From positions 177,919 through 241,918 of the IMG/VR virus record IMGVR_UViG_3300025770_000870: 64,000 bases of DNA; one strand, given 5' to 3'. Positions 4,849-62,416 of this stretch are shown one piece after another; position 1 is the first letter of the stretch, and the number at the start of each line of letters is the position of its first letter. Made by a program: the position numbers and the translations under genes. The notes below the pieces were generated by a model. It saw only the letters and a program-made list of their open reading frames with translations, did no database searches and was not told the DNA's origin.

Positions 4849-5442
4849 ATGAAGCATATTAGAACGTATGAAAAATATCGTATTGTAAAGAACAGATCTG
4901 AAATTATCAAAGAAGCTGTTCTACAAGTTAATGATATTTATAAAGTAAAGACAATGATTGATATTCCTCAATCTTTGATTAACTCTTATGTTAAGAAAGT
5001 TAAAGAAACTACTGGTAAGAACCTAAGACAATTTTTTGGTGATGTTGACATCGCTGAGGAAATTGTTAAATATATTAATATGAACAATCTTGATATAGAG
5101 AAGATTCCAGGTGGAGCTTTGATGGGTGGTCAAGAAGAAACACAAGTTCAGCAAGCTCAACCAGAAGCACAACCACAAGCTCAAATGCAACCTCAGGTTC
5201 AACCAGAAGCACAACAAACACAACCACAAGGTGAGTTTGAAGAGCCACAAGCAGATGCTCAAGTACAGGCTCAAGATGGTCAAGTACAAGTTCAAGCAGA
5301 TGGTCAAACACAAGTACAAGATGGTCAAGTACAGGCTCAAGATGGTCAAGTACAGGCTCAAGATGGTCAAACACAAGGTCAAGTACAAGGTCAAGCACAA
5401 GACGAAGATGAAGAAGAGGACGAAGAAGAACTTCCACTTTAA
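4849..5442 (+). CDS. Gln-rich low-complexity protein with CTS-like N-terminus
   Basis: starts MKHIRTYEKY; QAQDGQV repeats; acidic tail EEEELPL; late-promoter motif upstream. Confidence 0.75.
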   Translation: MKHIRTYEKYRIVKNRSEIIKEAVLQVNDIYKVKTMIDIPQSLINSYVKKVKETTGKNLRQFFGDVDIAEEIVKYINMNNLDIEKIPGGALMGGQEETQVQQAQPEAQPQAQMQPQVQPEAQQTQPQGEFEEPQADAQVQAQDGQVQVQADGQTQVQDGQVQAQDGQVQAQDGQTQGQVQGQAQDEDEEEDEEELPL

Positions 5443-5465
5443 TTTATAGAAAATATTAAAAAATG

Positions 5466-5497
5466 AAACCCATCAAATAAACTTTGATGGGTTTTTT
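5466..5497 (+). terminator. intrinsic terminator
   Basis: AAACCCATCAAA-taaac-TTTGATGGGTTT followed by a T-run. Confidence 0.8.
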
Positions 5498-5515
5498 ATT
5501 TAATATATACTTACA

Positions 5516-6130
5516 ATGAGATACCTAAAGGCATATGAGAATTATAATACTGATACAACACTTATAATTGTTGATGTTCAAAAATCATTTAAGAAATTCT
5601 TTTCTGAGATGTACATAAATAAATTAAAAAAGTATTGTAATGAATTTGTCAATGTTTATCAAATCTGGGATAACCATACAGATGGTAAAATTGTTGATAA
5701 AGACTACTTATATGATAAAAATCCTGAAATTCCAATACATGATGATTTATACCATTTTCCTAACCAAAGTGAGTTAATCGAAAAGAGATATAATTATGAT
5801 GTAGATGCTGATTTTTATAAAAAAATTCTAGATAAGGAAGTTTATAAAGAGATTAGTGATAAAGAGGATAATAAACAATTAAAAAAAGGTGACTTTTTCC
5901 GAACAAAAGAGGGAACTATTATAGTTTATATTGGTAATAATCATAAATGGTTCCAAGTTCCTATTAAATTATATAAACATCTTGTTGAATTAAGGGGTAA
6001 GAGTGTTATTATTGTTGGTGGTTCTGATTCTGAATGTTTGGAGGATATTATTACATCTGCTGAAAGTCTTGGTGTTAATATTAAAAGAGATTATAAGTAT
6101 ATCTACTCAGCAAATCATTGTCCTATCTAA
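5516..6130 (+). CDS. isochorismatase/cysteine-hydrolase-fold protein
   Basis: LIIVDVQKSF N-terminal motif and IIVGGSDSECLE; CTS-like start MRYLKAYENY. Confidence 0.6.
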   Translation: MRYLKAYENYNTDTTLIIVDVQKSFKKFFSEMYINKLKKYCNEFVNVYQIWDNHTDGKIVDKDYLYDKNPEIPIHDDLYHFPNQSELIEKRYNYDVDADFYKKILDKEVYKEISDKEDNKQLKKGDFFRTKEGTIIVYIGNNHKWFQVPIKLYKHLVELRGKSVIIVGGSDSECLEDIITSAESLGVNIKRDYKYIYSANHCPI

Positions 6131-6504
6131 ATTACTGAAGCATAAACCTCATAGTCTTTGAGATTGAATGTTATAACCATATACTCTTGGTGTCTATCTG
6201 GATCTTCGAAAAACTCAACTGTTAGCCCATAGTCTATACCATCTATTTCCTCTATATAATCTGATATTTGTGCTCTAATATCTCCTTCGATAGCTTCTGC
6301 TGATAATCTTGTTTCATATAATAGAGCTGGTAAATCTGCTCCGAAGTTTGGATCACCTAATAAATCACCTTTATTAGTGAAAATGACCATTTCGTATTTT
6401 TGTACGATCACCCTAATCACATCATCCTCAATCATTTCTTTATCGGTGAATCTTGGGTGACCAGGGTAACCTATGTAGAAGTCTATAAAATTAATATCTG
6501 CCAT
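6127..6504 (-). CDS. baseplate wedge protein, gp25/GPW-like
   Basis: TNKGDLLGDPNFGADLPALLYE matches the GPW_gp25 T.KGER...P.FG..L..LLFE pattern. Confidence 0.8.
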   Translation of the reverse strand: MADINFIDFYIGYPGHPRFTDKEMIEDDVIRVIVQKYEMVIFTNKGDLLGDPNFGADLPALLYETRLSAEAIEGDIRAQISDYIEEIDGIDYGLTVEFFEDPDRHQEYMVITFNLKDYEVYASVI

Positions 6505-6536
6505 GTGTTTATATATTAATTTTTATATATACTCAT

Positions 6537-7106
6537 ATGAAATATCTGAAATTTTTTGAATCTTATAGAGGAACTGTATCTGTTAATAGAGATATTTTTA
6601 TAAAGGTTTTATCTGATTATAGTAGTATATATGATGATGGTTTGGTTACACAATTAGAGGAATTGGGATTTGAGAGTAGTGATGTAATTGCTGATATGAT
6701 AGAAGATTCATTGAATAATGGTGATCGTATAAGTTTAGAGGCTATAACACTTTTAGTTGATGAGATATCAAGAGGTAATTCTGAGAGGAGCGCAAGTAAG
6801 TTACAGGATATTTATAATGAATGTGAATATCATTTAAATAATAGTACTGTTGATGTTATTGATAACTTGAAAGATATATTCTCTGAATATGTTGATGATA
6901 ATAAAGCAATGATATATAAAACTGGTGATAAATCTGACAACCGATGTGTCGTTTTACTAAAACAGGTTGATGTTTTGTTAAATATCGATTTCGATGAAGT
7001 ATTAAATAGGGTTAAAGAATTTGTAAACTTAAAACATATGGAATATGTTGGTAGTAAAGACCGAATTAAATTTGAGTTTTATGAAAGATATCCTGATGAA
7101 GATTAG
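6537..7106 (+). CDS. hypothetical protein with CTS-like N-terminus
   Basis: starts MKYLKFFESY, a few nt after TTATATATAC. Confidence 0.7.
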   Translation: MKYLKFFESYRGTVSVNRDIFIKVLSDYSSIYDDGLVTQLEELGFESSDVIADMIEDSLNNGDRISLEAITLLVDEISRGNSERSASKLQDIYNECEYHLNNSTVDVIDNLKDIFSEYVDDNKAMIYKTGDKSDNRCVVLLKQVDVLLNIDFDEVLNRVKEFVNLKHMEYVGSKDRIKFEFYERYPDED

Positions 7107-15608: not shown

Positions 15609-17306
15609 ATGCCATCATATAATAACTTTAACGGAGCAGCAGGAGCAGATTCTAACTTCGCTGCTAGTAATTCAGCAGTTGAGAATAAAGGACTATTTAG
15701 TCGTATTCTAAGAAACCTTTCAAATTATGGTATGAACTATGATGATATGATCATCAGAAATCAAGTTGGTATCGGTATAAATGAGGATCCATATTCAGCT
15801 AGAGGTAATTCGATGTATGATTTCTTTAGTCAGAGAGCTGTGGCTTCTGTTTTGAATAGAAAGTCAATACCTTATCTAGATAAAGCATATGGTGATAAGA
15901 GAAGAATACTTAGAGAGTATTCTATTAAGGATGAAATAAGAGATTTTGTGAGTACTATATCGGATGAGTCTATTGTTTTTAATGATGATGTTGCCTTTTG
16001 CTCACCTAAATCACTATCAAATGAATATCCACAAGAAGTAAGAGATAAGTATCAAGAATATTTCGAAAAAATATACAATAAGTATGGATTTTCTGATGGT
16101 ATTAGTGCTTGGGATATGATGAGAGATTTCCTTATTGATGGTTATATAGCTATTGAGATTATATATGATGATAAGAAAAAGAATATTGTTGGTTTCAATA
16201 GAATGAGACCAGAAACTTTAGTACCTGCTTATGAACCAGCTATTGGACACTTATGGATACAATTTCCAGAGGATCCACAATTAAGGAGAATATTTTTAGA
16301 TTCACAAATAGTTTATATATCATATTCAACACAGAATGATTATTCAGAAACTTCTTATGTTGAAGGTTTGATAAAACCATATAATCAATTAAAAATATTA
16401 GAACAAACTAGAATAATGTTCAATGTTATAAACGCTACTCTTTATCAAAAATTTACAATTCCTATTAAAGGATTGTCTAGACAAAGAGCAGAAGAACAAA
16501 TAGGTCAGTTAATACATGATTATTCAGAAGAAGTTGAGTGGGATGATAGTCTAGGAACACTTACTATCAATGGTGCTAAGCACTTACCTTACAATAAACA
16601 AATATGGTTTCCTGAGGGAGATGCTGGTACTCCTAATATGGAGATGGTTTCACCAGAAGGTCATGATTTGAATGATGAAACTATGTTATCTTGGTTTTAT
16701 AAGTCTCTTAAAAGAGCTTCTAAGATACCTATATCTAGATTCGAAGGTGAAAATGGTGGTGGTAACCTTTTTGGTGACGCTTCTGAGATGACTAGAGATG
16801 AGATTAAATTTCACAATTTTATTAGTAGATTAAGAGCTAACTTTAAAGAACTTATTGTTAAGCCACTTAAATTACAAATGTTAATTGAGTTTCCTGAATT
16901 AACAGAGGATGAGGTATTTACTAATAGAGTTGATATTGACTTCTATACTAATCAAATATTTGAAGATTGGAAGAAGATAAATAACTTAGCTAAGAAATCA
17001 GAAATAGTTGGAACTTTATTAGGTGTTATGAGAACAGATGAAAAACCTTATTTTCACATTGAGTGGATAATGGATAATATATTCAAGCTTACTCCAGAGG
17101 AGAAAGCTGAGAATGACAGGTATTGGGCTCGTGATGCTGGTGAAGGTGTTGGTTCTGGTGAAGAAGGCGCTGAAGGCGGAGATGATGGAGGCGACTTTGG
17201 TGAATCTGGTGATGTTGGTGGTGTAGATGATGCTGGTGGTGGAGATGATGGTGGAGATGCTGGTGGAGATGCTGGTGGAGATGACGGTGGAGAATTTGAA
17301 TTCTAA
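15609..17306 (+). CDS. portal protein (T4 gp20-like) with Gly/Asp-rich tail
   Basis: FLIDG, SYVEGLIKPYNQLKILE, ITRDE-like MTRDEIKFHNFISRLR; late promoter upstream. Confidence 0.92.
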   Translation: MPSYNNFNGAAGADSNFAASNSAVENKGLFSRILRNLSNYGMNYDDMIIRNQVGIGINEDPYSARGNSMYDFFSQRAVASVLNRKSIPYLDKAYGDKRRILREYSIKDEIRDFVSTISDESIVFNDDVAFCSPKSLSNEYPQEVRDKYQEYFEKIYNKYGFSDGISAWDMMRDFLIDGYIAIEIIYDDKKKNIVGFNRMRPETLVPAYEPAIGHLWIQFPEDPQLRRIFLDSQIVYISYSTQNDYSETSYVEGLIKPYNQLKILEQTRIMFNVINATLYQKFTIPIKGLSRQRAEEQIGQLIHDYSEEVEWDDSLGTLTINGAKHLPYNKQIWFPEGDAGTPNMEMVSPEGHDLNDETMLSWFYKSLKRASKIPISRFEGENGGGNLFGDASEMTRDEIKFHNFISRLRANFKELIVKPLKLQMLIEFPELTEDEVFTNRVDIDFYTNQIFEDWKKINNLAKKSEIVGTLLGVMRTDEKPYFHIEWIMDNIFKLTPEEKAENDRYWARDAGEGVGSGEEGAEGGDDGGDFGESGDVGGVDDAGGGDDGGDAGGDAGGDDGGEFEF

Positions 17307-19713: not shown

Positions 19714-19723
19714 ATTCCTTTTA

Positions 19724-20294: not shown

Positions 20295-22436
20295 ATGAAA
20301 CCGGTTTTAATAGTAGAAAATTCACAAAACCAACTTATTAGAGAGAGTAACTCTGCTAATAAGGGGTACACATTAGGTGGTACATTCACCGAATTCGGTG
20401 TCAAGAACAGAAATGAACGTATTTATTCGGCTGATAAATTTTTACCAGCATTGAATGAAATGAATGAACGTATAAGTGGCTTAGGTGCTGTTTATGGTGA
20501 ATTCGATCATCCAGACGTTTTTGACACATCACTCTCAAGAGCCTCGCATATTATCACAAAGGCAAGTTATATCCAAGAGAAAAATATCGTAGCGGGAGAG
20601 ATTAAATTACTAAGTACTTACTGGGGTAAGGAAGCAAAAGCACTTGTCGATGACGGGTGTCCTGTATTCGTTTCTTCAAGAGCTGCTGGTATTACTGAAT
20701 CTGATGGTTCAGTTTCCCTTAAAAAATTATTTACTTATGACATTGTTGCTGACCCAGGATTTGCGTCAGCTAAAATGGATGTTAAGGTACTTAATGAGTC
20801 ATTGGGATATAATGACGAAAAATCTAACTTTAGGATATATGAAATGTCCGATGAGTCAAAAATAAATGAGTTATTCAATATGAACAAAAATGAGTTTGTA
20901 ACAAAAAAACAATTGACTGACTACTCTAACTACTTAGTTAACGAATTAGCATCAACTAAGAAGACAGTTAATACAGCCATTACTAAAGGTAATGTAGCTC
21001 CAAAGAAATTGGAACAATTATTAGAGTATTATGAAGAGTTAAACAACTCTAATTCAAAAGTAGCTAAGTATCTTGATTATTTATCAGAAAAGGTACAAAT
21101 AGTAGTTAATGAGAATAAATCATTAAAGAAGACAACTGAGAAATTAGTTAAACATAATGATTATTTAGCAGAAAACTTAGAGAAATCTATTAATTACGCT
21201 GAGTATTTAGGTGAAAACTTAGATAAGAACATTGATTATTCTGAGTATTTAGCTGAGAATTTAGACAAGAACATATCTTATGCTGAGTATTTAGCTGAGA
21301 ATGTTGATAAAAACATTTCATATTCTGAGTATTTAGCTGAGAGTTTAGATAAGAACATTGCTTATTCTGAATATATCGCTGAGAATTTAGACAAAAACAT
21401 CGCTTATTCTGAGTATATCGCTGAGAATTTAGACAAAAACATTGCTTACTCTGAGTATATCGCAGAAAACGTTGATAATAATATCGCTTATTCTGAATAC
21501 TTATCTGAGCATGTTGAAGGTAACATTGCTTACTCTGAGTATATCGCAGAACATTTAGATGATAACATCGCTTATTCTGAGTATGTAGCAGAGAATCTTG
21601 ACAAATCAATTAATTATCAAGGATTGATAGTTGAGAGATTAAACGGAGATAAATTATTTGAATCTGTTGAAGGATCTGAAAGCTTCCCATCTCTAGACGA
21701 TGCTGGTTTTGAAGCTTTTGATGATGAAGAAAACAAAGATGAAGAAAATTGTAATCTTGAAGTATCATTAGATAATAATGATGAAGAAAATGGTGTTGAA
21801 GAATCTGTTGAGAATACAGATGATTACGCAACAGAAGAAAACAAAGATGAAGAAAATAAAGATGAAGAAAACAAAGAAGATAAAACTGAAAGCCATGATA
21901 TGGTAAACGGTGATAGTGATTCTGAATTATCTGAATCTATTGATAAACTAATTGAAGAAGCTAAAAAACGAAAAGTTTCTGAAACAACAGATGTGAATTT
22001 CTTGAAGTTCATGTCTAAATCACAAGTTGACAGCTTTTACGCTTTGTCAAATGACGAACAAGAGTCAGTTAAAGTCCATATAAACGAAAGAGACTACTTT
22101 ACTCAAAAAGATGTTTTGTTATTGATATCTGAAGCACTATCAACTAAGAACGAATCTCTTGAAGAGAGAATAATCAGATTGATGCCTGAAAACACAAAGC
22201 CAATCTGGGAACAATTAAACGACACTTCTAAGAAATCTATCTTGTCACAAGCTAGATTATATCCAGAAGACGTTTTAACTACTGAGGCACAAGTTGAACA
22301 TTTTTGGTCAACTAGAAAGCTAAAGACAAATGAGTCTGTAACAAAGAAACTTGTATCACATGAAAGCCTTATCCAAGAAGATAAACTTTCAGATAATGAT
22401 GTTCAAGCGATAATGGAAAGATTCAAAAATATTTAA
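20295..22436 (+). CDS. prohead protease (gp21-like) fused to a scaffold/core domain
   Basis: KNRNERIY, YGEFDHP, SHII, VSSRAAG, DIVADPG; then 14-aa repeats and an acidic region. Confidence 0.9.
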   Translation: MKPVLIVENSQNQLIRESNSANKGYTLGGTFTEFGVKNRNERIYSADKFLPALNEMNERISGLGAVYGEFDHPDVFDTSLSRASHIITKASYIQEKNIVAGEIKLLSTYWGKEAKALVDDGCPVFVSSRAAGITESDGSVSLKKLFTYDIVADPGFASAKMDVKVLNESLGYNDEKSNFRIYEMSDESKINELFNMNKNEFVTKKQLTDYSNYLVNELASTKKTVNTAITKGNVAPKKLEQLLEYYEELNNSNSKVAKYLDYLSEKVQIVVNENKSLKKTTEKLVKHNDYLAENLEKSINYAEYLGENLDKNIDYSEYLAENLDKNISYAEYLAENVDKNISYSEYLAESLDKNIAYSEYIAENLDKNIAYSEYIAENLDKNIAYSEYIAENVDNNIAYSEYLSEHVEGNIAYSEYIAEHLDDNIAYSEYVAENLDKSINYQGLIVERLNGDKLFESVEGSESFPSLDDAGFEAFDDEENKDEENCNLEVSLDNNDEENGVEESVENTDDYATEENKDEENKDEENKEDKTESHDMVNGDSDSELSESIDKLIEEAKKRKVSETTDVNFLKFMSKSQVDSFYALSNDEQESVKVHINERDYFTQKDVLLLISEALSTKNESLEERIIRLMPENTKPIWEQLNDTSKKSILSQARLYPEDVLTTEAQVEHFWSTRKLKTNESVTKKLVSHESLIQEDKLSDNDVQAIMERFKNI
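21174..21635 (+). repeat. 11 x 42-bp in-frame tandem repeat (NLDKNIAYSEYIAE consensus)
   Basis: units counted in the translation from NLEKSINYAEYLGE to NLDKSINYQGLIVE. Confidence 0.9.
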
Positions 22437-22521: not shown

Positions 22522-24252
22522 ATGTCACACATTAGAATAGACAAACAAAAAGCTATGAAGAAATGGTCTCCAGTATTAGAGAACATGGGAGTTGCTGGTG
22601 AAGATAGATTGGATTGGATGTCAGAATATGCTGAATTTCACTCAATCAATGAAAACGCTTACGCAAACGCTTCAAACGTATCGGGTATGGGAGCTGTAGT
22701 AGCTGCACAACCTAATTCATTAGCTGGTAACACAATTGGCAATTACGCTGACTCAACTGGTTCAGGTGATGTTGGTCAAAACCTTTTACCGGTAGCGATG
22801 AAAATAGCAGCTCAAACAATCGGTTTAGATTTAGTAGCTGTTAAACCTTCTCCAGGTCCAAAAATTGATTTATTATATATCGACTTTAGATATGATGATG
22901 CTCATTTAGGAGATTCAGACGAAAGACCACAAGTCTTTAAGATTGCACCAAACGCTACATTTTTAACTACTGGTGCTGGTGGTATGACAGCAGTTATCGC
23001 TGGATTAAGAGCTCAATTAGCTACGAATACAATCACTGAAACAGTTGGTGGTTTAACTGGTAGAATGTGGAATGATATCACAGATGGTTCAGATGTAGTT
23101 GTAGAACCAACACCTTCAAAAGAAGGAAAAGTTGAATTTTTAGGATTCTCTAGAATTGATGGTTATCCAATGTTCAGAGCTTACAGACAGATGAATACAT
23201 CTCACACAGATGTTGGTTCAGCTCAAGCAAACTGGGGATTTGACCCGACTAGAAACACATTTAGTCCTACAATGTCAATGGCTTCTCAAATTACTGATTT
23301 AGGAGATGTTACTTTAACTGATGAGCCTACTATTGAATTAGTATCAGCTCTTGAAGATCACATTCCTGGTTTCTCTGCAAACTGGATGTCGGATGCTACT
23401 GGCCCTGCTGGTAACTATCCAATGGATAGAGAAATGGACGATAAAAGATACTCTGGTATCATCGGACCAAAAATTAGTTCTAAAACAGTTGCCGTAGGTA
23501 CTATTGAAGTATCTTCAGCTCTTAGAAGAACTGAAATTGAAGATATCAAAGCTAACACTGGTATGGATATCGTTCAAAAAATGGAGTCAATTCTTGTTAA
23601 TGAATTATCTCAAACAATCTCTAAGCAAATTGTTGCTAAGATATTTGAAATGGGTTCACTTAACAGATTATCTGCACCAGCTTATGTTGGAACAGCACCG
23701 GCACCATTAGCGGGACAAACAATCTTTGACTTAAACACAGCTTATGCAACTGTTGCTGCTGGTAATGGAAACGTTGGTGGTGAAACTACACACGCTGTTC
23801 AAAGAAAGCTTGTAACTAAGATAGCTCACGCTTCTAACTACATCGCTACAGAGGGACGTGTTGGTCCAGCTCAATACCTTATTACAAATGGGGGATTAGC
23901 AGCAGCACTTTCTGATATCTCTGGTTATACAATTAACCCAGTGAAATCAAAAATCAATGGTCAAGGTCAATTATACCCAGTAGGTTCAATTGGAGATATT
24001 TCAATATATGTTGATCCATATATGAGATATAACGACAATAGAATTGCTCTTGGTAGAAAGAACAATCCAGATCAACCAGGTATTATTTTTGTACCTTACT
24101 TAATGGCTCAGTCTATATCTGTAATTTCTGAAGCGACTTTCGCTCCTAGAATGTTACTAAGATCTAGATACGCTGTAACAGAAGTTGGTTGGTTCCCACA
24201 AAAACAATTTATGACTATCGAAGTTACAGATGTGAATACACTTCTTAACTAA
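22522..24252 (+). CDS. major capsid protein (T4 gp23-like)
   Basis: KKWSPVLE start, QTIGLDLVAVKP, IFVPY, TFAPRMLLRSRYAV; lies downstream of protease/scaffold. Confidence 0.92.
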   Translation: MSHIRIDKQKAMKKWSPVLENMGVAGEDRLDWMSEYAEFHSINENAYANASNVSGMGAVVAAQPNSLAGNTIGNYADSTGSGDVGQNLLPVAMKIAAQTIGLDLVAVKPSPGPKIDLLYIDFRYDDAHLGDSDERPQVFKIAPNATFLTTGAGGMTAVIAGLRAQLATNTITETVGGLTGRMWNDITDGSDVVVEPTPSKEGKVEFLGFSRIDGYPMFRAYRQMNTSHTDVGSAQANWGFDPTRNTFSPTMSMASQITDLGDVTLTDEPTIELVSALEDHIPGFSANWMSDATGPAGNYPMDREMDDKRYSGIIGPKISSKTVAVGTIEVSSALRRTEIEDIKANTGMDIVQKMESILVNELSQTISKQIVAKIFEMGSLNRLSAPAYVGTAPAPLAGQTIFDLNTAYATVAAGNGNVGGETTHAVQRKLVTKIAHASNYIATEGRVGPAQYLITNGGLAAALSDISGYTINPVKSKINGQGQLYPVGSIGDISIYVDPYMRYNDNRIALGRKNNPDQPGIIFVPYLMAQSISVISEATFAPRMLLRSRYAVTEVGWFPQKQFMTIEVTDVNTLLN

Positions 24253-24273
24253 ATAGTTAAATTGAAAATACCG

Positions 24274-24301
24274 AAAAAAGACTCCTTGTGGGTCTTTTTT
24301 C
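24274..24301 (+). terminator. intrinsic terminator after capsid gene
   Basis: AAAAAGAC(T)-loop-(G)GTCTTTTTT. Confidence 0.65.
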
Positions 24302-24326: not shown

Positions 24327-24716
24327 ATGATTAAAAAGTATAATTATTTCTTTGAGTCTAAGAAGACTAAGTTCCCTAATATTAAGAAAGTTGAAGTAGA
24401 AGGATTCTTTATTCATATAGGTAGAGACTCCAAATCTAACGACCACTTAACATTTAACGTTGCTGATGATAAAGACATCTGGATGCACGCTAAGGGTGTT
24501 CCTGGGAGTCATGTTATTATAAGAGTTAGAGAAAACTTACCAACTCAAGAAATACTAAGATATGTTGCTGAATTAGCTAAAAAGAATAGTAAAGCTAGTA
24601 AAGAAGATAATGTAACTGTTGTTTATTGCCAAAGAAAATTTGTTAAGAAAGAAAGTGGTATGAATGAGGGTCAAGTAAGAGTTGATTATATCAATGCCTA
24701 CGAAATCGTAGTTTGA
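24327..24716 (+). CDS. standalone NFACT-R (DUF814, RqcH/FbpA C-terminal RNA-binding) domain protein
   Basis: IGRDSKSNDHLT, DIWMHAKGVPGSHVII, VVYCQRKFVKK; CTS-like start MIKKYNYFFES. Confidence 0.9.
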   Translation: MIKKYNYFFESKKTKFPNIKKVEVEGFFIHIGRDSKSNDHLTFNVADDKDIWMHAKGVPGSHVIIRVRENLPTQEILRYVAELAKKNSKASKEDNVTVVYCQRKFVKKESGMNEGQVRVDYINAYEIVV

Positions 24717-26110: not shown

Positions 26111-26605
26111 ATGAAGAATATTAAGAATTATAAGAAGTTCCTAGAAAAGGAAAATATAAGAGAGGATGAGAACTCATATCTTAATGATGATATTAACGAT
26201 CCTTGGGGTGATCCAAGTGATAGATGGTCTGATCGGTCGGATTATGATGATGAGGGTTACCAGTATCTTAATGGTGGTGAGTCTAGATCTAGTGAGGATG
26301 ATAATGATGATAGAGATGATGTTCAACATTTACTTTACTTGTTAAGAACAATGTTTAAGAACAATGGTATTGAGGTTGAAATAGAACATAAGAACTTAGA
26401 TATTATGATATATTGTGTTATGAATAGAAAGGAAAGATTAAAAGATGTTATTAATGTTTTAGATGTGGCTAATAAATTGAAGAAGGATGTATTACCACAA
26501 TATGATTGTGAGTTTGAGATGTGGGAAACTAGAAAAGGTAAACCAATGTTAACCTTTAACTTCTTTTATGATGAAGGTTTGAACGATGATCGTGTTCCAT
26601 TTTAA
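26111..26605 (+). CDS. acidic hypothetical protein with CTS-like N-terminus
   Basis: starts MKNIKNYKKFLE; ends LNDDRVPF. Confidence 0.7.
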   Translation: MKNIKNYKKFLEKENIREDENSYLNDDINDPWGDPSDRWSDRSDYDDEGYQYLNGGESRSSEDDNDDRDDVQHLLYLLRTMFKNNGIEVEIEHKNLDIMIYCVMNRKERLKDVINVLDVANKLKKDVLPQYDCEFEMWETRKGKPMLTFNFFYDEGLNDDRVPF

Positions 26606-29460: not shown

Positions 29461-29665
29461 TAATACATTCCAGGTGAATTCGGCTTCTAATAAAAATGCT
29501 ATTGTGGTTGATCCAGATGGATACACAACTATTGATAAATTAATACTTGTTGATCAAAAAGATGGAACTAAGTGGGATTTTTCAATTTATGATGGTGAGG
29601 TATTAGTTGAGCCACATGGTAAATCAGAAAAAAGAGAATATAGAATCAATAAGGTTATTTCTTAA
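29444..29665 (+). CDS. small protein, tail-fibre-like fragment with REYRINKVI motif
   Basis: LILVDQKDGTKWDFSIYDGEVLV resembles a fibre beta-hairpin motif; shared C-terminal motif. Confidence 0.5.
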   Translation: MAQQINNTFQVNSASNKNAIVVDPDGYTTIDKLILVDQKDGTKWDFSIYDGEVLVEPHGKSEKREYRINKVIS

Positions 29666-30113
29666 TTAATTTAATCTTTAAGTTACCATTTCCTTTTATT
29701 AGTCTATGATAAACACCCATAGGTATTTCTACAATACCCTCAATTACTTTTGGAAGTTGATTATCGATTTGAATCATCCAATCAGTTTCATTTATAGACT
29801 CTATAATTCTATCTTCTCTATCACGATGCCAAATAAATTCACCTGAATCAGTTTCTTGTTTAAATTCTCTGATAAATGTATTCTCTGATAACTGTTCTTC
29901 AATAAATGGTAATACAACGTCTGGGTTTTCATTTTGCCATTCTTTCAAAGCTTTCATATCAAATTCTTTTAATTCATTATCATATCCACATTGGTGACAT
30001 AAATATTTTCTATCATCATTTATTTCAATTTCCCAATTCCAATCACAGTTATCACAAGTAATTTCTTTGATTTTAGCGATTTCGAATATTTTATATGTTT
30101 CTAAGTGTTTCAT
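29655..30113 (-). CDS. zinc-ribbon plus cupin-like protein with CTS-like N-terminus
   Basis: MKHLETYKIFE; CDNC...CHQC; IWHRDREDRIIE and GVYHRLIKG. Confidence 0.6.
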   Translation of the reverse strand: MKHLETYKIFEIAKIKEITCDNCDWNWEIEINDDRKYLCHQCGYDNELKEFDMKALKEWQNENPDVVLPFIEEQLSENTFIREFKQETDSGEFIWHRDREDRIIESINETDWMIQIDNQLPKVIEGIVEIPMGVYHRLIKGNGNLKIKLIKK

Positions 30114-30703: not shown

Positions 30704-31119
30704 TCTTCTACTTCATTTTCACCATCACTTGTAAATTCAGAGAAGTTAATAACACCAACACCATCACTCTCAACACATTCGCATCCGGGGCATCCACATT
30801 CACAGCCAGCTTCTCCGGTGCAATTATCACAACAAGCACAATCTCCTGATAAAGTTTCATCACTTTCTTCTTCTAATTCATTCTCCATATCAATATTCTC
30901 AATATTCTCAATATTATCGATGTTAATCGTTATGAAGTTTTCAAACTTAACAATCTTATCCATTTCTTTTTTAAATGCCTTATCAACCTTTTCTTGGTCC
31001 TCAACAGATGTTGTGAATCCAGGTTCAACATCTTTATCAACTAGTTCTTTAGCATCAAATGTAATTTCTTGTGTTTCTTCTTCTTTTTTGGCTTCATTAA
31101 ACCTTTTAATCTTTTTCAT
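30700..31119 (-). CDS. acidic protein with metallothionein-like Cys cluster and CTS-like N-terminus
   Basis: MKKIKRFNE; CACCDNCTGEAGCECGCPGCEC. Confidence 0.7.
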   Translation of the reverse strand: MKKIKRFNEAKKEEETQEITFDAKELVDKDVEPGFTTSVEDQEKVDKAFKKEMDKIVKFENFITINIDNIENIENIDMENELEEESDETLSGDCACCDNCTGEAGCECGCPGCECVESDGVGVINFSEFTSDGENEVEE

Positions 31120-43659: not shown

Positions 43660-44109
43660 ATGGGATTTAAAAAGTTAGTTAATTACTACGTATTACGCAA
43701 ATCTTTAAAAGAAATCGAGATGAATAGAATTTTAGAAAAAATATACAAGAAAATAAAAATTTCTACTAAAGAAAAGAAATTTTTGGATTTATATAATCGT
43801 ACTACCGAAGAGGTTGCTAAGGATTTGATGTTCTTGTCTAAAAATGCAACTTCTAGAAAGGTTAAAGAAATATTAGAAAGAGGTAAGAAAGTCATTTGTG
43901 ATTTACATGATAGGGATGGTAAAATTGGACTTGAGATACTTAGTATTGAGAATAATGTCGATTCTGTTACATGTGATGTTATTATGAGAAATGAGACACA
44001 TCAATTACATGATAGATTTTTATATAATATTATTTATAATAATATAAAAAAAGAGTATTCATTACAAGAACAAGACGAATATTATGAAAAAATAGAAGCT
44101 ACGAAATGA
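43660..44109 (+). CDS. hypothetical protein
   Basis: EMNRILEKIYKKIKISTKEKKFLD helix motif near the N-terminus. Confidence 0.65.
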   Translation: MGFKKLVNYYVLRKSLKEIEMNRILEKIYKKIKISTKEKKFLDLYNRTTEEVAKDLMFLSKNATSRKVKEILERGKKVICDLHDRDGKIGLEILSIENNVDSVTCDVIMRNETHQLHDRFLYNIIYNNIKKEYSLQEQDEYYEKIEATK

Positions 44110-44378
44110 TAAAGAAATTTAAACAATTTAATGAAGAAATATCTGGTACTGAATTGGTTGGTCCTATTGGTCCTGCTTATGGTGAGACGGGGTTACAGAA
44201 TAAAACCATAAATTCACATGACACAAATGTTATTTATTCAGAGATGGATTCTAAGATATATACAATAGATGAATATAATGATATTTATGGTGAGTACCTT
44301 AAATTTGGTGGATCTCCGTTAGATGGATTTACAAAAGAAAATATAGATATAATATTGGATTTTTTACAAACTAATTAA
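44106..44378 (+). CDS. small protein with CTS-like N-terminus
   Basis: MIKKFKQFNEE. Confidence 0.7.
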   Translation: MIKKFKQFNEEISGTELVGPIGPAYGETGLQNKTINSHDTNVIYSEMDSKIYTIDEYNDIYGEYLKFGGSPLDGFTKENIDIILDFLQTN

Positions 44379-51611: not shown

Positions 51612-52136
51612 TCAGATTCTTTTATCTGGACTTACAAAATCATTATAGGTGTCTGCCTTTACAACGAGGTAGGCATCTTCTAGTTCATACCAATTTCCTT
51701 CATCCACATCATCACCTCCTAATCCTCTATTAGCAACATCATCAGTAAAAACTTTGAACTTATAAATTGAATAACCACCATCAAAATAAACAGCGATAAC
51801 TTCATCACCGTCCTTAACAGAATCTCTTTCATCAGAAAGTTCTTTTAATTCATTAACATCAATTTCACTTGATCTTATTTTTTTGAAATCTTTTCCTAGA
51901 TTTTGATGAACTTGTTTAGATATTAACTTAGCCATTTTCTCTTGAAGGTCACCCAATTCAAATGATTGTCCTGGTGTTATATCTCCTGATACTGTATCAA
52001 ATTCTCCGTGTATATCAAAAAATAAATCATTAATTTTATCTTCTAATAAATCTAATGTATATTTATAAATATCATCCTCTGTATGAGAAACCTTTTCAAA
52101 AGACTCAGTTATATATTCTGACCATTTTTTAATCAT
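51612..52136 (-). CDS. hypothetical protein with CTS-like N-terminus
   Basis: MIKKWSEYITES. Confidence 0.7.
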   Translation of the reverse strand: MIKKWSEYITESFEKVSHTEDDIYKYTLDLLEDKINDLFFDIHGEFDTVSGDITPGQSFELGDLQEKMAKLISKQVHQNLGKDFKKIRSSEIDVNELKELSDERDSVKDGDEVIAVYFDGGYSIYKFKVFTDDVANRGLGGDDVDEGNWYELEDAYLVVKADTYNDFVSPDKRI

Positions 52137-55412: not shown

Positions 55413-55808
55413 ATGAAATATTTAAAGACGTTTGAAAATTACTCTCCAGTAAATGAAGAGGAAGAAGGAATAAGAAAGTTCTTTACTGGTCATGACAGTA
55501 GTGATGATAGAGATAAGGCTATGGTAGCTTTCAATAAAGCTTTAGATGATGCTGAAGAAGCTGCAAATAAAAATCCAAAGGGTTATTCGTTTAACAGAGA
55601 ACGTTTAGAAAAAGAAGCTAGTGAAAATAACTATAAAGGTGGATTAAGAATCCAAAGAGGTGGTAGAAAAGACAGATCACCCGGTCAAGCATCCGCTAAT
55701 TCGAGTAGAATGTACGTTGTTTATGACGATGGTGTTACTGGATTTGTAGATGTGTTTGTAAAACCAGCAGCTGCTAATAGAAAAGATAGTGGATTTAATA
55801 GACCATAA
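55413..55808 (+). CDS. hypothetical protein with CTS-like N-terminus
   Basis: MKYLKTFENYSPVNE; late promoter upstream. Confidence 0.75.
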   Translation: MKYLKTFENYSPVNEEEEGIRKFFTGHDSSDDRDKAMVAFNKALDDAEEAANKNPKGYSFNRERLEKEASENNYKGGLRIQRGGRKDRSPGQASANSSRMYVVYDDGVTGFVDVFVKPAAANRKDSGFNRP

Positions 55809-58025: not shown

Positions 58026-58664
58026 TTACTTGACCTTAATAGGTTCCCAATTTAAATTTGGAAGTCTTTCTTTTATAACCTTAGTTGCTTTTCTTAAAAA
58101 TTTTGAATTATCATCATAGAATATAACTTTATTAACACCAGTTTCTTTAACAAGTTCAACTATTTTGTGACCTTTCCACTCACCCGCATTTTTTATTCTG
58201 GTTGGTAACATATGTAATCCATATTTTGGATATTCAATTCCTAACTTTGATAAAACGGATATTAACTTTTCTTTTATTACTTCTGGTCTAGCTGTTACTA
58301 TACATTTATTATCCACCTTATTATATAGGTCAATTAGTGGTTTTAATTCTGTTGGTAAACTCTCATCTGTTTGTGAAAATATATTTGGAGTTACTAGATA
58401 TAATCTAGATTTTTTTCTAACCCAGTTTCCAAATTCTTTATATCTATATGTTGGGTCGTCAAGATATATGCGACCATTTTCCCATTTTAAATCTTCGATT
58501 TTACAACCTGATCTTCTAATAGAAATATCTAATAGGTCTTTGACTGAATAACTCTCCTTTAAGTATTTTAGAGCTAGTTCCTCAAAACTAGGAGTCTCTA
58601 CTAATGTATCATCAAAATCAAATACATATAAGGTATCATATTCTTCAAATCTGTTAATCCTCAT
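58026..58664 (-). CDS. second HAD-superfamily phosphatase with CTS-like N-terminus
   Basis: FDFDDTL, VTAR, FYDDN; starts MRINRFEEY. Confidence 0.8.
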   Translation of the reverse strand: MRINRFEEYDTLYVFDFDDTLVETPSFEELALKYLKESYSVKDLLDISIRRSGCKIEDLKWENGRIYLDDPTYRYKEFGNWVRKKSRLYLVTPNIFSQTDESLPTELKPLIDLYNKVDNKCIVTARPEVIKEKLISVLSKLGIEYPKYGLHMLPTRIKNAGEWKGHKIVELVKETGVNKVIFYDDNSKFLRKATKVIKERLPNLNWEPIKVK

Positions 58665-60606: not shown

Positions 60607-60635
60607 AAAAAGAGACTCGATTGAGTCTCTTTTTT
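60605..60635. terminator. bidirectional intrinsic terminator
   Basis: AAAAAAAGAGACTC-gatt-GAGTCTCTTTTTT. Confidence 0.85.
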
Positions 60636-60653
60636 GTTTTATATATCTGTTAA

Positions 60654-60995
60654 TTATTTCTTTTCTATTGTTACTTCATAATAAGTACCATTTCTACCAC
60701 CTACACTAAGTACTGGAAATTTCTCTTTCATTTCTTTGAGAATTTCCTCATCAAAAGGCATATATACATAAAAAGCTTCTTTACCATCATTTTTCCATCC
60801 ATCTCCATTCCAAATGAATGCTGTTTTATCTGACCCAGGATCACTTACACCCTTGAACTTTTTACCTAAATCATGACCCTCATTACCTGAGTTGATATCT
60901 TTAACTTCTAAATCATTGTTTTGTAAGAAGGATTTAGCCATGTCAATTTCTTTAGATTCTACACTTTCGTTAAATTTTAACCAATTCTTAATCAT
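60654..60995 (-). CDS. hypothetical protein with CTS-like N-terminus
   Basis: MIKNWLKFNES. Confidence 0.7.
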   Translation of the reverse strand: MIKNWLKFNESVESKEIDMAKSFLQNNDLEVKDINSGNEGHDLGKKFKGVSDPGSDKTAFIWNGDGWKNDGKEAFYVYMPFDEEILKEMKEKFPVLSVGGRNGTYYEVTIEKK

Positions 60996-61468
60996 TATTT
61001 CTTTTTCTTTTTAGCTAAGATTGCTTTTTGTAATCCAGCTGGAAGTTTCTTTTGACCCGCAGTTAATCCTTTGGTATCTACTTTATCTTCCTTCTTATCT
61101 TCCTTCTTATCTTTAGTATCTTTCTTACCTTTAACATCTTTCTTATCATCCTTATCAACATCTTTACCTTCTTTTTTCTTACCTTTTTGTTTATCTAAGT
61201 AAGCTTTTAACCCAGCGTTCATGCCTTTTTTCTCAACTACTTGTGATTCTTCGTCACCCCAGAGTCTTATTTTTCTTTGGTTTTCTTTTTCTTCTAAATC
61301 TTCTTCTTCTTCATCTGATACGGAACCTAACTGTCCTTCAAAATCTTCAATACCTTCAACATCATCGATTAAATCTGTATTTTCTTCTTCCGGATTGATA
61401 TCATCTTCATTATTAAATCTACCAAGATCTCTAGGATCGTAGTTTTCAAATTTCTTTAGGTATTTCAT
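60995..61468 (-). CDS. bipolar acidic/Lys-rich protein with CTS-like N-terminus
   Basis: MKYLKKFENY; acidic first half, K/D-rich second half. Confidence 0.75.
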   Translation of the reverse strand: MKYLKKFENYDPRDLGRFNNEDDINPEEENTDLIDDVEGIEDFEGQLGSVSDEEEEDLEEKENQRKIRLWGDEESQVVEKKGMNAGLKAYLDKQKGKKKEGKDVDKDDKKDVKGKKDTKDKKEDKKEDKVDTKGLTAGQKKLPAGLQKAILAKKKKK

Positions 61469-61603
61469 ATATGTTAATATTTTTTATAACTTATATATTA
61501 AATTATATAATGTAATTTCTTGATTTATCTTCTTTTGTTAATGTTTTTAAAAAAAAACATTTTATTTCACCTTTTTTCTAGGTGGTTTTTAATATATATT
61601 AAT

Positions 61604-62416
61604 ATGAATAGTATAAAGAGATATGGTGAATATGTGAGTTTCGATGACATGGCCTTTGAGTTTGTTGACTCATTCCAAACGATGATAAAAGAGAATGATG
61701 AGTTGGATGATGATGGTGATTGGAAAACACATTGGAAAAAATTTAAAAACGATTTAAAATTACACGGTGGTCTTATCGGTACATTTGGTGCTGGTATCGG
61801 TGCTTTCATACCCGTTGTTCAATCAATGATGGGTAATATGAATATATCAACCGAGGTCACTCTTGAAATTTCTGTATTACTCACTATATGTTCATTGACT
61901 ATAATTTATTTAGAAGAAAAGAAATTTAAAAATTATGAGGAAGAAGCTTTATTAACAAAAGATTCTAAATCTATGTTAGAAGAATTGAAGATGAGAGGTA
62001 TTGGAAACGGCCTTGTTAAATTGGTTATCAAATCTTTTGAATCTGTGACTAATATATTTTCGGTTATTGGAAAACATTTAGGAGCTCTTGTTGGAGGTGT
62101 TATTGATATGTTTACTTATACAGCTTTAATGATTCCTGTTATGAATGGTATATTGTATTTAATTGGTAAGTATGAACTTACTCCTGAAACAGTTATTCAA
62201 AATCTTATAGGCCTTGCTGCTGGTATAGGTACATTAGTTGCTAAACATGGCATAAATTATATAATTAATAAGATTAAAGGAAAATTCAAAATAGAAAAAG
62301 GTGATGTCCTTGATGAACTCGACACACCAAAAATCCAAAAATTTAATCTTTATGGATCCGATATCGATGATATGTTTGATGATATTGAACCTATAAACGA
62401 TGAGAACTTAATTTAA
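61604..62416 (+). CDS. membrane protein with CTS-like N-terminus
   Basis: likely start MNSIKRYGEY at 61604 after AATATATA; several Gly-rich hydrophobic helices. Confidence 0.65.
   Translation: MNSIKRYGEYVSFDDMAFEFVDSFQTMIKENDELDDDGDWKTHWKKFKNDLKLHGGLIGTFGAGIGAFIPVVQSMMGNMNISTEVTLEISVLLTICSLTIIYLEEKKFKNYEEEALLTKDSKSMLEELKMRGIGNGLVKLVIKSFESVTNIFSVIGKHLGALVGGVIDMFTYTALMIPVMNGILYLIGKYELTPETVIQNLIGLAAGIGTLVAKHGINYIINKIKGKFKIEKGDVLDELDTPKIQKFNLYGSDIDDMFDDIEPINDENLI

What the first reader, a model, noticed from the sequence alone, without database searches (positions are those of the whole stretch)
4849..62416. About 17 unrelated proteins share an N-terminal capsid-targeting-like signal
Seen in sequence: MKHIRTYEKY (4849), MRYLKAYENY (5516), MKYLKFFESY (6537), MIKKYNYFFES (24327), MKNIKNYKKFLE (26111), MKHLETYKIFE (30113), MIHKFNQYKEISE (30703), MKKIKRFNE (31119), MKHLKKFNES (31334), MIRIDSYMEFINE (31708), MIKKFKQFNEE (44106), MIKKWSEYITES (52136), MKYLKTFENY (55413), MRINRFEEY (58664), MIKNWLKFNES (60995), MKYLKKFENY (61468) and MNSIKRYGEY (61604). 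Most follow the late ATATATA promoter or lie in its operons. Established knowledge: T4 internal proteins carry a 10-aa capsid-targeting sequence (MKTYQEFIAE) that gp21 removes after Glu. Inference: this phage packages a large, diverse cargo (NFACT-R, a HAD phosphatase, a cysteine hydrolase, a cupin, a metal-binding protein, a membrane protein) for injection with the DNA.
Basis: partly seen in the sequence, partly recalled or inferred. Interest (0 to 1): 0.82.

Follow-up and report, generated by a model that had tools for sequence, protein, structure and literature searches.

The report
Shared N-terminal tag in huge phage
In this very large T4-related phage, roughly one gene in seven starts with the same ten-residue peptide on otherwise unrelated proteins; it is most likely an address label that loads them into the assembling capsid, as in phage T4 but on a scale (over 100 proteins per genome) not described before.

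Summary
13 match a model trained on another genome or are backed by orthologues; 4 are marginal. No other ATG in six frames matches. The proteins share nothing beyond the first ~12 residues.

A related 635-kb phage (LR745206.1) has about 110 such genes among 921 ORFs, spread genome-wide. The motif M-K-[YH]-[LI]-K-x-[FY]-(N/E/K..)-E-[S/N/A] is selected at the amino-acid level. It is absent from 596 Gb of cellular genomes but common in large viral contigs.

The window encodes a T4-type head module: portal, a gp21-like protease fused to a repeat scaffold, and a gp23-like capsid protein. The most conserved tag positions (4, 7 and a Glu) are those that T4 genetics assigns to capsid targeting and processing.

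In the cultured relative phage PAU, an analogous N-terminus marks the annotated scaffold and 4 of 5 annotated "internal capsid proteins".

Best reading (confidence about 0.6): a capsid-targeting propeptide, hugely expanded. Packaging, cleavage, injection and "late" timing remain unproven. Tagged proteins are acidic and mostly without known domains. Some may be disposable core components rather than injected cargo.

The parts
4849..5442 (+). tagged gene, MKHIRTYEKY; acidic Q/E-rich protein
   Evidence: PSSM 16.1 bits, HMM rank 5. Orthologue in LR745206.1 keeps the tag. Promoter-like element 24 nt upstream.
5516..6130 (+). tagged gene, MRYLKAYENY; isochorismatase-like fold (weak)
   Evidence: PSSM 15.6. 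In 43 orthologues E8 is invariant, the linker at 11-14 is hypervariable and the domain starts at T15. AF2: residues 1-11 have pLDDT < 50 and the fold starts at 15. Foldseek result.
6537..7106 (+). tagged gene, MKYLKFFESY
   Evidence: PSSM 11.4, HMM rank 8. Promoter-like element 5 nt upstream.
24327..24716 (+). tagged gene, MIKKYNYFFES; NFACT-R domain; immediately after the capsid gene
   Evidence: PF05670 E = 8e-16 from residue 23. 58 orthologues carry varied tag forms that always end ..ES|KK.
26111..26605 (+). tagged gene, MKNIKNYKKFLE; acidic
   Evidence: PSSM 10.5, HMM rank 9. Orthologues: MKLKKFNQLFE, MKIKTFIKYLE and others.
29655..30113 (-). tagged gene, MKHLETYKIFE; last gene of a five-gene tagged operon
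   Evidence: PSSM 19.9, HMM rank 4.
30134..30703 (-). marginal member, MIHKFNQYKEISE
   Evidence: PSSM -2.4, HMM rank 14 among noise. No orthologue in LR745206.1.
30700..31119 (-). tagged gene, MKKIKRFNEA; acidic, Cys-rich C-terminus; second tag-like Met at 30963
   Evidence: PSSM 16.3, HMM rank 6. Relatives start at MDKIVKFENF.
31128..31334 (-). tagged gene, MKHLKKFNES (best match in the window)
   Evidence: PSSM 23.7, HMM rank 1.
31334..31708 (-). marginal member, MIRIDSYMEFINEE; first gene of the operon
   Evidence: PSSM -2.6, HMM rank 16. ..EFINE resembles MA9V-2 FINE|A and T4 EFIAE|A. Promoter-like element 4 nt upstream.
44106..44378 (+). tagged gene, MIKKFKQFNEE
   Evidence: PSSM 9.4, HMM rank 10. 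Orthologue: MIKKFYQFINE.
51612..52136 (-). marginal member, MIKKWSEYITES
   Evidence: PSSM -5.8, not in the HMM top 45. The orthologue N-terminus is identical.
55413..55808 (+). tagged gene, MKYLKTFENY
   Evidence: PSSM 19.4, HMM rank 3. Identical copies in four IMG/VR contigs.
58026..58664 (-). tagged HAD-type gene, MRINRFEEY, then the DxD strand
   Evidence: HMM rank 11. Aligns to the untagged HAD paralogue with an extra ~8 N-terminal residues.
60654..60995 (-). tagged gene, MIKNWLKFNES
   Evidence: PSSM 10.9.
60995..61468 (-). tagged gene, MKYLKKFENY; acidic then Lys-rich
   Evidence: PSSM 19.5, HMM rank 2. Promoter-like element 23 nt upstream.
61604..62416 (+). marginal member, MNSIKRYGEY; hydrophobic segments
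   Evidence: PSSM -3.8. The orthologue starts ..MKIQRYQEYENY.
20295..22436 (+). prohead protease (gp21-like) fused to a scaffold-like repeat and acidic region
   Evidence: phrog_207 E = 1.6e-30; Pfam S77 is weak. 29% identity to T4 gp21 over 112 aa, including the His and Ser motifs.
21158..21604 (+). 42-nt tandem array encoding 14-aa repeats ..YSEY[IL]AENLDKNIA
   Evidence: TRF: about 10 copies. Translation. Each unit carries a hydrophobic-x-Glu site like the T4 ..EFIAE.
22522..24252 (+). major capsid protein, T4 gp23 family, with a homologous N-terminal propeptide
   Evidence: PF07068 E = 3e-26. KKWSPVLEN compares with T4 NKWKPLLEG. ..SINE|NAY compares with PAU ..LME|NY.
15609..17306 (+). portal protein
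   Evidence: phrog_213 E = 9e-58.
784..2916 (+). large terminase, T4 type
   Evidence: PF03237 E = 8e-20.

Best explanation
The shared N-terminus is a capsid (prohead-core) targeting propeptide of the T4 type.

Proposed mechanism. A short amphipathic peptide, with a hydrophobic residue at position 4 and an aromatic one at position 7, docks the newly made protein onto the scaffolding core. Here the core is the repeat-rich C-terminal half of the protease-scaffold protein. The gp23-like shell then closes around it. The gp21-like serine protease cuts after the Glu at position 8, 9 or 11, in a hydrophobic-x-Glu | Ser/Asn/Ala context. This frees the mature protein inside the head. Some freed proteins would stay and leave with the DNA. 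The very acidic, low-complexity ones would probably be degraded core material.

What is new. In T4 a handful of proteins use this route. In this huge-phage lineage the tag has spread to about 12-14% of all genes, mostly fast-evolving proteins with no known domain.

Shown: the tag, its position-specific conservation at the protein level, its restriction to viruses, the T4-type head genes, and the parallel in phage PAU.

Inferred: docking, cleavage, packaging and injection.
For: 1. The tag is real, strictly N-terminal and portable.
- Window: 11 of 75 N-termini score at least 9 bits, against 0 of 442 internal Met.
- LR745206.1: 113 of 921 N-termini score at least 10 bits, against 13 of 3536 internal Met.
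- 97 of 110 tagged proteins there are singletons once the tag is trimmed.

2. Selection acts on the peptide, not the RNA.
- Synonymous codon use at tag positions equals genome-wide use.
- Orthologues swap K/R, Y/F and I/L but keep E8 invariant. A hypervariable 4-residue linker follows, then the domain.
- AF2 places residues 1-11 outside the fold.

3. T4-type machinery is present: portal, a gp21-like protease with conserved His/Ser motifs, a gp23-like MCP with a homologous propeptide, and terminase.

4. Match to T4 genetics.
- In T4, CTS positions 4 and 7 matter for targeting, and positions 8 and 10 for processing (PMC9026906). The T4 CTS is MKTYQEFIAE.
- Here position 4 is L/I in 87% and position 7 is F/Y in 81%.
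- 107 of 110 tags have a Glu at positions 7-14. P3 is hydrophobic in about 70%. P1' is S/N/A/G in 77 of 107.

5. The same site type recurs where cleavage is expected.
- The window protease has 14-aa repeats containing Y-[IL]-A-E-N.
- The MA9V-2 protease-scaffold has about 13 [ILFM]-N-E-[SA] sites, and its MCP propeptide has ..EFINE|A.
- The PAU MCP matures at or next to ..ALME|NY according to N-terminal sequencing (PMC5646251; sequence).

6. Cultured relative PAU.
- 19 of 296 genes begin MK[TS][IL]xxL[YF]E, against 0 of 1438 internal Met.
- 14 of them lie around the head genes.
- Carriers include the annotated scaffold and 4 of 5 annotated 'internal capsid proteins' (p = 6e-5).

7. Tagged genes behave like accessory or arms-race genes.
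- Only 2 of the 40 largest have any Pfam hit, against 41 families for 40 size-matched untagged genes.
- They turn over faster: 12 of 17 have an orthologue in LR745206.1, against 55 of 58 untagged.

8. Tagged genes are enriched for the promoter-like element that also precedes terminase, portal, protease and MCP (OR 3.8, p = 5e-10).
Against: - There is no direct evidence that any tagged protein is in a virion or is cleaved.
- About 110 tagged proteins per genome is far beyond any documented capsid cargo.
- Tagged genes are spread over the whole genome rather than concentrated at the head module.
- Tagged proteins are on average acidic (-0.053 against -0.018 net charge per residue), unlike the basic T4 internal proteins.
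- In class-A tags (..K-x-F-E|N-Y) the P3 residue is not hydrophobic.
- Marine metatranscriptome contigs cover protease and MCP but not the adjacent tagged genes 24327 and 26111. These genes are therefore not expressed at capsid-gene level there.
- Phages with the same protease-scaffold type showed no shared N-terminus in the 50 kb sampled (PTm1, Lak-B1).
- The putative cleavage motif is not depleted inside tagged proteins, although it is too rare to test.
- The basis of the PAU 'internal capsid protein' labels could not be traced to a paper.
Confidence: 0.6

Rival explanations
1. The peptide is a genuine protein-level sorting or recognition tag, but for a destination other than the capsid interior. 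Examples: recognition by a phage chaperone, a timed degradation signal, or recruitment to another phage-made assembly or compartment.
For: - The tag shows protein-level conservation, is strictly N-terminal, is disordered and is separated from the domain by a linker.
- The number of tagged genes (about 110) and their genome-wide spread are unusual for capsid cargo.
- They include enzymes and a multi-pass hydrophobic protein.
- RNA levels next to the capsid gene are low.
Against: - No candidate receptor or compartment gene was identified.
- The specific match to T4 CTS determinants (positions 4 and 7, terminal Glu) would be coincidental.
- The same applies to the putative protease sites in the MCP and scaffold.
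- It would also leave the PAU association with annotated internal capsid proteins and scaffold unexplained.
Confidence: 0.2
2. The motif reflects translation initiation: an N-terminal codon or nascent-peptide optimum for the many apparently leaderless or Shine-Dalgarno-less mRNAs of this phage. It would have no role in the finished protein.
For: - Half of the tagged genes have the promoter-like element only 4-6 nt before the ATG, implying leaderless mRNAs.
- The tag begins with A-rich Lys codons.
- Huge phages encode translation factors (PMC7162821).
Against: - Synonymous codon choice at tag positions mirrors the genome.
- The conserved features are an aromatic residue at 7 and a Glu at 8-11, not nucleotides.
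- Only about 12% of genes have the tag, and housekeeping enzymes lack it.
- Untagged genes use the same 4-5 nt spacing.
- Phages of the same G+C content and host phylum lack it (PTm1, Lak).
- There is no tagged protein in 596 Gb of cellular genomes.
Confidence: 0.08
3. The shared start is a historical relic. The genes descend from one ancestor by duplication, or were built on a mobile promoter-plus-start cassette, and the N-terminus has no function of its own.
For: - Tagged genes often lie in tandem arrays. Examples are five in a row at 29655-31708 and arrays in LR745206.1.
- Most are small and have no known domain.
- The promoter-like element is frequently adjacent.
Against: - A relic would decay. 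Instead the tag is the best-conserved part of fast-evolving proteins and is maintained in class across orthologues at 70-98% identity.
- It is found in lineages from 20% to 48% G+C.
- It sits on domains of independent origin: NFACT-R, HAD, methyltransferase.
- DNA identity is not cassette-like. Third codon positions are 53% identical against 61% at positions 1 and 2.
Confidence: 0.07

Closest known systems
Phage T4 capsid targeting sequence (CTS) of internal proteins IPI-III, with the similar 10-residue propeptides of gp24 and Alt
   Same: - An approximately 10-residue peptide at the extreme N-terminus of otherwise unrelated, fast-evolving proteins.
- Hydrophobic or aromatic residues at positions 4 and 7, ending in Glu followed by a small residue.
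- The phage has a gp21-type protease, a gp23-type shell and a core.
- T4 sequences: MKTYQEFIAE, MAKINELLRE and MELITELFDE.
   Different: - The consensus differs (MK[YH][LI]KxF[NE]E[SN]).
- Scale: about 110 genes per genome (12-14% of ORFs) scattered genome-wide, against fewer than ten in T4.
- The carriers are mostly acidic rather than basic.
- Packaging and cleavage are unproven here.
Sphingomonas phage PAU shared N-terminus MK[TS][IL]xxL[YF]E(AKLNEA) on scaffold and 'internal capsid proteins' (GenBank JQ362498.1 annotation)
   Same: - The MCP is of the same gp23 family and is related to the window's.
- The tag architecture is the same and strictly N-terminal (19 of 296 genes, 0 of 1438 internal Met).
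- A ..LNE|[AS] site is also present in the MCP propeptide.
   Different: - PAU's tag is a different variant and scores below 4 bits with the window-lineage model.
- It is mostly confined to the head module (14 of 19 within 21 kb).
- No publication describing it was found.
Long N-terminal propeptides of phiKZ / 201phi2-1 / SPN3US head and ejection proteins
   Same: - A gp21-related protease cuts after Glu in a short motif.
- The propeptides are thought to target proteins into the prohead.
- There are tens of head proteins, including ejected enzymes (PMC5694885).
   Different: - Those propeptides are 20-130 residues long, are not a common 10-mer, and are shared only between paralogues.
- The cleavage motif is (S/A/G)-x-E.
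Cargo-loading peptides of encapsulins and encapsulation peptides of bacterial microcompartments
   Same: A short amphipathic terminal peptide joined by a flexible linker to diverse cargo, and sufficient for encapsulation. This is a working analogy from established knowledge.
   Different: - There is no evolutionary link.
- Those peptides bind the shell and are not removed.
- They are usually C-terminal in encapsulins.

Membership tests
T4-type capsid targeting sequence (CTS) propeptide | A short (about 10-20 aa) peptide at the extreme N-terminus shared by otherwise unrelated proteins of one phage | tested here: met
   Window and LR745206.1 statistics, and all-vs-all BLAST after trimming.
T4-type capsid targeting sequence (CTS) propeptide | The phage encodes a gp21-family prohead protease and a gp23-family shell assembled on a core | tested here: met
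   - Protease: phrog_207 E = 1.6e-30. BLASTP to T4 gp21 gives 29% over 112 aa with the GE.xHP and VSSR motifs. Pfam S77 is only below threshold.
- MCP: PF07068 E = 3e-26.
T4-type capsid targeting sequence (CTS) propeptide | Targeting determinants: hydrophobic or aromatic residues at positions 4 and 7 (T4 IPIII genetics) | tested here: met
   EM model: position 4 is L 0.60 / I 0.27; position 7 is F 0.47 / Y 0.34. The T4 rule is from PMC9026906.
T4-type capsid targeting sequence (CTS) propeptide | Processing determinant: Glu at the end of the tag in a hydrophobic-x-Glu | small-residue context | tested here: inconclusive
   - 107 of 110 tags have a Glu at positions 7-14; P3 is hydrophobic in about 70%; P1' is mostly S/N/A/G.
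- Class-A tags (..xFE|NY) lack a hydrophobic P3.
- The protease specificity is inferred only.
T4-type capsid targeting sequence (CTS) propeptide | The mature protein is present inside proheads or virions with the tag removed | not testable with these tools
   Only indirect evidence: the PAU record labels 4 tagged proteins 'internal capsid protein' and 1 'scaffolding'.
T4-type capsid targeting sequence (CTS) propeptide | The tag alone suffices to package a foreign protein | not testable with these tools
   Needs a cultured member and fusion constructs.
T4-type capsid targeting sequence (CTS) propeptide | Synthesis together with head (late) genes | tested here: inconclusive
   - A shared promoter-like element precedes terminase, portal, protease and MCP, with enrichment OR 3.8.
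- That element also precedes non-structural genes.
- Metatranscriptome contigs cover MCP and protease but not the neighbouring tagged genes.
Sec / lipoprotein signal peptide | A hydrophobic h-region of 7-15 residues after a basic n-region | tested here: not met
   The tag is charged and amphipathic with a Glu at 8-11. True signal peptides (MKKLLTMLLIL..) were separated out.
Single paralogous protein family | Detectable similarity beyond the N-terminus | tested here: not met
   - No significant pair in the window.
- 97 of 110 are singletons in LR745206.1.
- Distinct Pfam domains: NFACT-R, methyltransferase.
Translation-initiation codon bias | Nucleotide-level constraint, present across gene classes and in organisms of like composition | tested here: not met
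   - Codon usage equals the genome's.
- Absent from PTm1 and Lak-B1 and from cellular genomes.
- Housekeeping genes are untagged.

The most novel reading that the evidence does not exclude
Huge phages of this lineage load a 'starter proteome' of the order of a hundred different, rapidly evolving proteins into the capsid through one universal ten-residue address tag, and deliver at least part of it with the DNA. If so, the packaged or injected proteome of uncultured huge phages can be read directly from sequence. The tag would also be a ready-made handle for packaging foreign proteins.
Probability: 0.4. Interest if true: 0.85.

Novelty: new variant of a known kind. Interest (0 to 1): 0.7.

Why it matters
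Most genes of huge phages have no known function, and none of the largest phages is cultured. A sequence-readable label marking which proteins go into the capsid would sort about 12-14% of those genes into one functional class. That class would be head-core or injected proteins, plausibly first-minute host take-over and anti-defence factors, as with T4 IPI and Alt.

It would also suggest that very large capsids carry a virion proteome closer in complexity to giant eukaryotic viruses. It would extend the T4 capsid-targeting principle across distant T4-like lineages (T4, PAU, MA9V-2, Mahaphage-type phages). Finally, it offers a simple, testable packaging handle in the cultured relatives.

Tried and rejected
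1. Chance or composition: rejected by the internal-Met and six-frame controls.

2. Hidden paralogy: rejected by trimmed all-vs-all BLAST.

3. DNA-level cassette or codon effect: rejected by the synonymous-codon test.

4. A host or cellular signal: one scan of 596 Gb of bacterial and archaeal genomes gave 3 hits. All were an 11-codon mini-ORF in one archaeal MAG.

5. A general feature of AT-rich Bacteroidetes jumbo phages: PTm1 and Lak-B1 (50 kb each) have none.

6. Depletion of the putative cleavage motif inside tagged proteins: the motif is too rare, no signal.

7. Cultured relatives of two tagged proteins from other lineages: tblastn found none.

8. PDB sequence search with the protease: only a designed coiled coil matched the repeats.

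9. Pfam and PHROG annotation of tagged proteins: almost nothing.

10. Literature searches for the motif, for CTS-like tags in huge or jumbo phages, and for the basis of the PAU annotations: nothing found.

11. Metatranscriptome contigs: they show the head genes transcribed, but give no timing and no read 5' ends.

Full report
**What the window is.**
- It has about 30% G+C and holds about 75 ORFs.
- Its DNA matches only two unannotated "uncultured phage" records of 635 and 642 kb (LR745206.1 at 82% identity, and LR756502.1).
- These belong to the huge-phage set in which all genomes above 634 kb were predicted to infect Bacteroidetes and were placed in the "Mahaphage" clade (PMC7162821).
- The window carries a T4-type morphogenesis core:
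  - large terminase, 784-2916 (PF03237);
  - a gp15-like protein, 8125-9168;
  - portal, 15609-17306 (phrog_213);
  - head maturation protease, 20295-22436 (phrog_207, E = 1.6e-30; weak Pfam S77);
  - gp23-family major capsid protein, 22522-24252 (PF07068, E = 3e-26).
- The protease domain aligns with T4 gp21 at 29% over 112 residues, across the GE.xHP and VSSR motifs.
- Its C-terminal two-thirds holds a 42-nt tandem array of about ten 14-residue units (..YSEY[IL]AENLDKNIA), followed by an acidic region. It is therefore a protease-scaffold fusion.

**The observation.**
- All 17 N-termini are at the stated places.
- A position matrix learnt by EM on the other genome (LR745206.1) gives at least 9 bits to 11 of 75 window N-termini. 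It gives that score to none of 442 internal Met and none of 1226 other ATGs.
- A gapped HMM from the same source ranks claimed N-termini 1 to 11 of 1075 Met-peptides.
- Counting 24327, whose 58 orthologues carry clear variants, 13 members are solid. Four are marginal: 30703, 31708, 52136 and 61604.
- None was missed.
- Once the first 14 residues are removed, the 17 proteins share nothing.

**It is much bigger than the window.**
- I fetched all 634,780 bases of LR745206.1.
- About 110 of 921 ORFs start with M-K-[YH]-[LI]-[KR]-x-[FY]-. They continue either N-E-S, or E-[NS]-[YF], or K-[IL]-F-E-S.
- N-termini scoring at least 10 bits: 113 of 921. The same score is reached by 13 of 3536 internal Met and 19 of 55,919 arbitrary positions (p = 1.6e-64).
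- Tagged genes lie in every 50-kb bin, often in tandem runs.
- 97 of 110 are BLAST singletons after trimming.

**It is a peptide-level signal.**
- Synonymous codon usage at tag positions equals genome-wide usage.
- Among 43 orthologues of 5516-6130 (70-98% identical), E8 is invariant. Positions 3, 4, 5 and 7 change only conservatively.
- Residues 11-14 are the most variable in the protein, and the conserved domain starts at residue 15.
- An AlphaFold model (pLDDT 82, pTM 0.82) leaves residues 1-11 below pLDDT 50, with the first strand at 15-19.
- The architecture is therefore tag, then linker, then domain.

**It is viral, not cellular or compositional.**
- The degenerate DNA pattern for MK[HY]LKxFENY has 47 matches in IMG/VR.
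- Every match is at the first ATG of an ORF of 72-252 codons, or at least 23 codons where the ORF is cut off by the end of the fetched locus.
- They cover many different proteins, on contigs mostly 100-640 kb, with 20-48% G+C.
- Neighbouring genes there often carry the tag too, for example 9 of 20 genes in L003.
- The same pattern in 596 Gb of bacterial and archaeal genomes hits only an 11-codon mini-ORF repeated in one archaeal MAG.
- Phages of similar G+C and host phylum with the same protease-scaffold type show no shared N-terminus in 50 kb each. These are Tenacibaculum phage PTm1 and Lak-B1.

**What kind of genes carry it.**
- Of the 40 largest tagged proteins of LR745206.1, only two have any Pfam hit: a methyltransferase and a DUF.
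- Forty size-matched untagged proteins hit 41 families, including aminoacyl-tRNA synthetases, PRPP synthetase, GrpE, S1 and an exonuclease.
- PHROGs add almost nothing.
- Tagged proteins are more acidic and turn over faster. 12 of 17 have an orthologue in LR745206.1, against 55 of 58 untagged (p = 0.013).
- In the window, one tagged protein is NFACT-R. One is HAD-type, with an untagged HAD paralogue at 3229-3744. One has a weakly isochorismatase/nicotinamidase-like fold.

**Why capsid targeting is the best reading.**
- The T4 internal proteins share only a 10-residue CTS (MKTYQEFIAE). It is cut once by gp21 and is sufficient to package foreign proteins.
- Suppressor genetics put targeting at residues 4 and 7, and processing at residues 8 and 10 (PMC9026906).
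- The T4 gp24 and Alt propeptides read from the T4 record have the same shape: MAKINELLRE and MELITELFDE.
- Here the most conserved tag positions are 4 (L/I, 87%) and 7 (F/Y, 81%).
- 107 of 110 tags have a Glu at positions 7-14. P3 is hydrophobic in about 70%, and Ser/Asn/Ala/Gly follows in 77 cases.
- Sites of the same type occur where cleavage is expected:
  - The window MCP propeptide is homologous to that of T4 (KKWSPVLEN against NKWKPLLEG). It has ..SINE|NAY where PAU has ..ALME|NY.
  - The PAU MCP is trimmed from 585 to 520 residues according to N-terminal sequencing (PMC5646251; sequences).
  - The MA9V-2 protease-scaffold has about 13 [ILFM]-N-E-[SA] sites.
  - The MA9V-2 MCP starts ..WSEFINE|AAPK, and small genes between its portal and protease genes start MKTFTYFINEA and MKNFFSFINEA.

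**The cultured relative PAU gives the strongest indirect support.**
- In the complete PAU genome, 19 of 296 genes start MK[TS][IL]xxL[YF]E, often followed by AKLNE[AS]. None of 1438 internal Met does.
- 14 of the 19 lie within 100-121 kb, around portal, protease, scaffold and MCP.
- The carriers include the annotated scaffold gp152.
- They also include four of the five genes annotated "internal capsid protein". Two of those (gp199, gp270) lie far from the head module (p = 6e-5).
- I could not find a paper stating how those labels were obtained. They are therefore taken as the record's own words.

**What argues for caution.**
- Nothing here shows packaging, cleavage or injection.
- A hundred-plus cargo species is unprecedented.
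- The carriers are acidic, and many look like T4 core proteins gp67/gp68 (acidic tails). Part of the set may be disposable core material rather than injected effectors.
- Class-A tags lack a hydrophobic P3.
- Marine metatranscriptome contigs cover protease and MCP up to the terminator after the MCP gene, but not 24300-26590, which holds two tagged genes.
- The promoter-like [TA]ATATATA element is enriched before tagged genes: 55 of 110 against 164 of 782 (OR 3.8). It also precedes terminase, portal, protease and MCP.
- That element precedes other genes too, and its timing is unknown.
- Its two spacings (4-6 nt and 20-30 nt) suggest that many mRNAs are leaderless.

**Rivals and verdict.**
- A different sorting function cannot be excluded (0.2).
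- Translation effects (0.08) and a functionless relic (0.07) fit the data poorly, for the reasons given above.
- I found no description of this expansion in the searched literature.
- Verdict: a real, strong and widespread feature. It is best explained as a T4-type capsid-targeting propeptide that this huge-phage lineage has expanded to more than 100 genes. It is a new variant of a known kind.

Noticed in passing
window 20295-22436 (array 21158-21604): The prohead protease is fused to a scaffold-like region. That region is built of about ten 14-residue repeats (..YSEY[IL]AENLDKNIA, a 42-nt tandem array), followed by an acidic Asp/Glu/Lys-rich stretch.
   Followed up: partly
window 17809-20125, minus strand: A 634-aa nuclease (phrog_13933) and a homing-endonuclease-like ORF sit between the portal and protease genes, on the opposite strand. 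They look like a mobile insertion in the head module.
   Followed up: no
window-wide, e.g. 5502, 6517(-), 24310, 31720(-), 50522; also LR745206.1: A promoter-like [TA]ATATATA element occurs at two preferred distances from the ATG: 4-6 nt and 20-30 nt. The short class implies leaderless mRNAs. The element also precedes terminase, portal, protease and MCP.
   Followed up: partly
window 24204-24330: Marine metatranscriptome contigs of four runs cover protease and MCP. They end at 24204-24236, just before the hairpin plus T-run after the MCP stop. Nothing is assembled over 24300-26590.
   Followed up: partly
window 30700-31119 (-), internal Met at 30963: This tagged ORF contains a second tag-like start (MDKIVKFENF). 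In four of five relatives the ORF begins there. This suggests a fusion of two tagged mini-genes or alternative starts.
   Followed up: no
window 3229-3744 (-) and 58026-58664 (-): Two HAD-type paralogues. One is untagged (PF10307, RNA-repair 'Swiss army knife' HAD). The other carries the tag as an extra ~8 N-terminal residues.
   Followed up: partly
window 31779-37646 (+) and 39756-43580 (-): Two very large ORFs (1955 and 1274 aa) have no Pfam match. G+C rises to 0.38 at 40-42 kb, against about 0.29 elsewhere.
   Followed up: no
JQ362498.1 (phage PAU), loci L149, L151-L154: PAU has its own shared N-terminus, MK[TS][IL]xxL[YF]E(AKLNEA), on 19 genes, including the scaffold and annotated internal capsid proteins. 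I found no paper describing it.
   Followed up: yes
OR513085.1 (Chryseobacterium phage MA9V-2), locus L150 36979-40602: The 1207-aa protease-scaffold protein carries about 13 [ILFM]-N-E-[SA] sites. The MCP N-terminus and two small head-module genes share ..FINE|A.
   Followed up: partly
L048-L050 (one Methanobacteriaceae MAG): An 11-codon mini-ORF, MKYFKFFENYS, with identical upstream sequence is repeated on three contigs. It is unrelated to the phage tag and is probably a repeat element.
   Followed up: no
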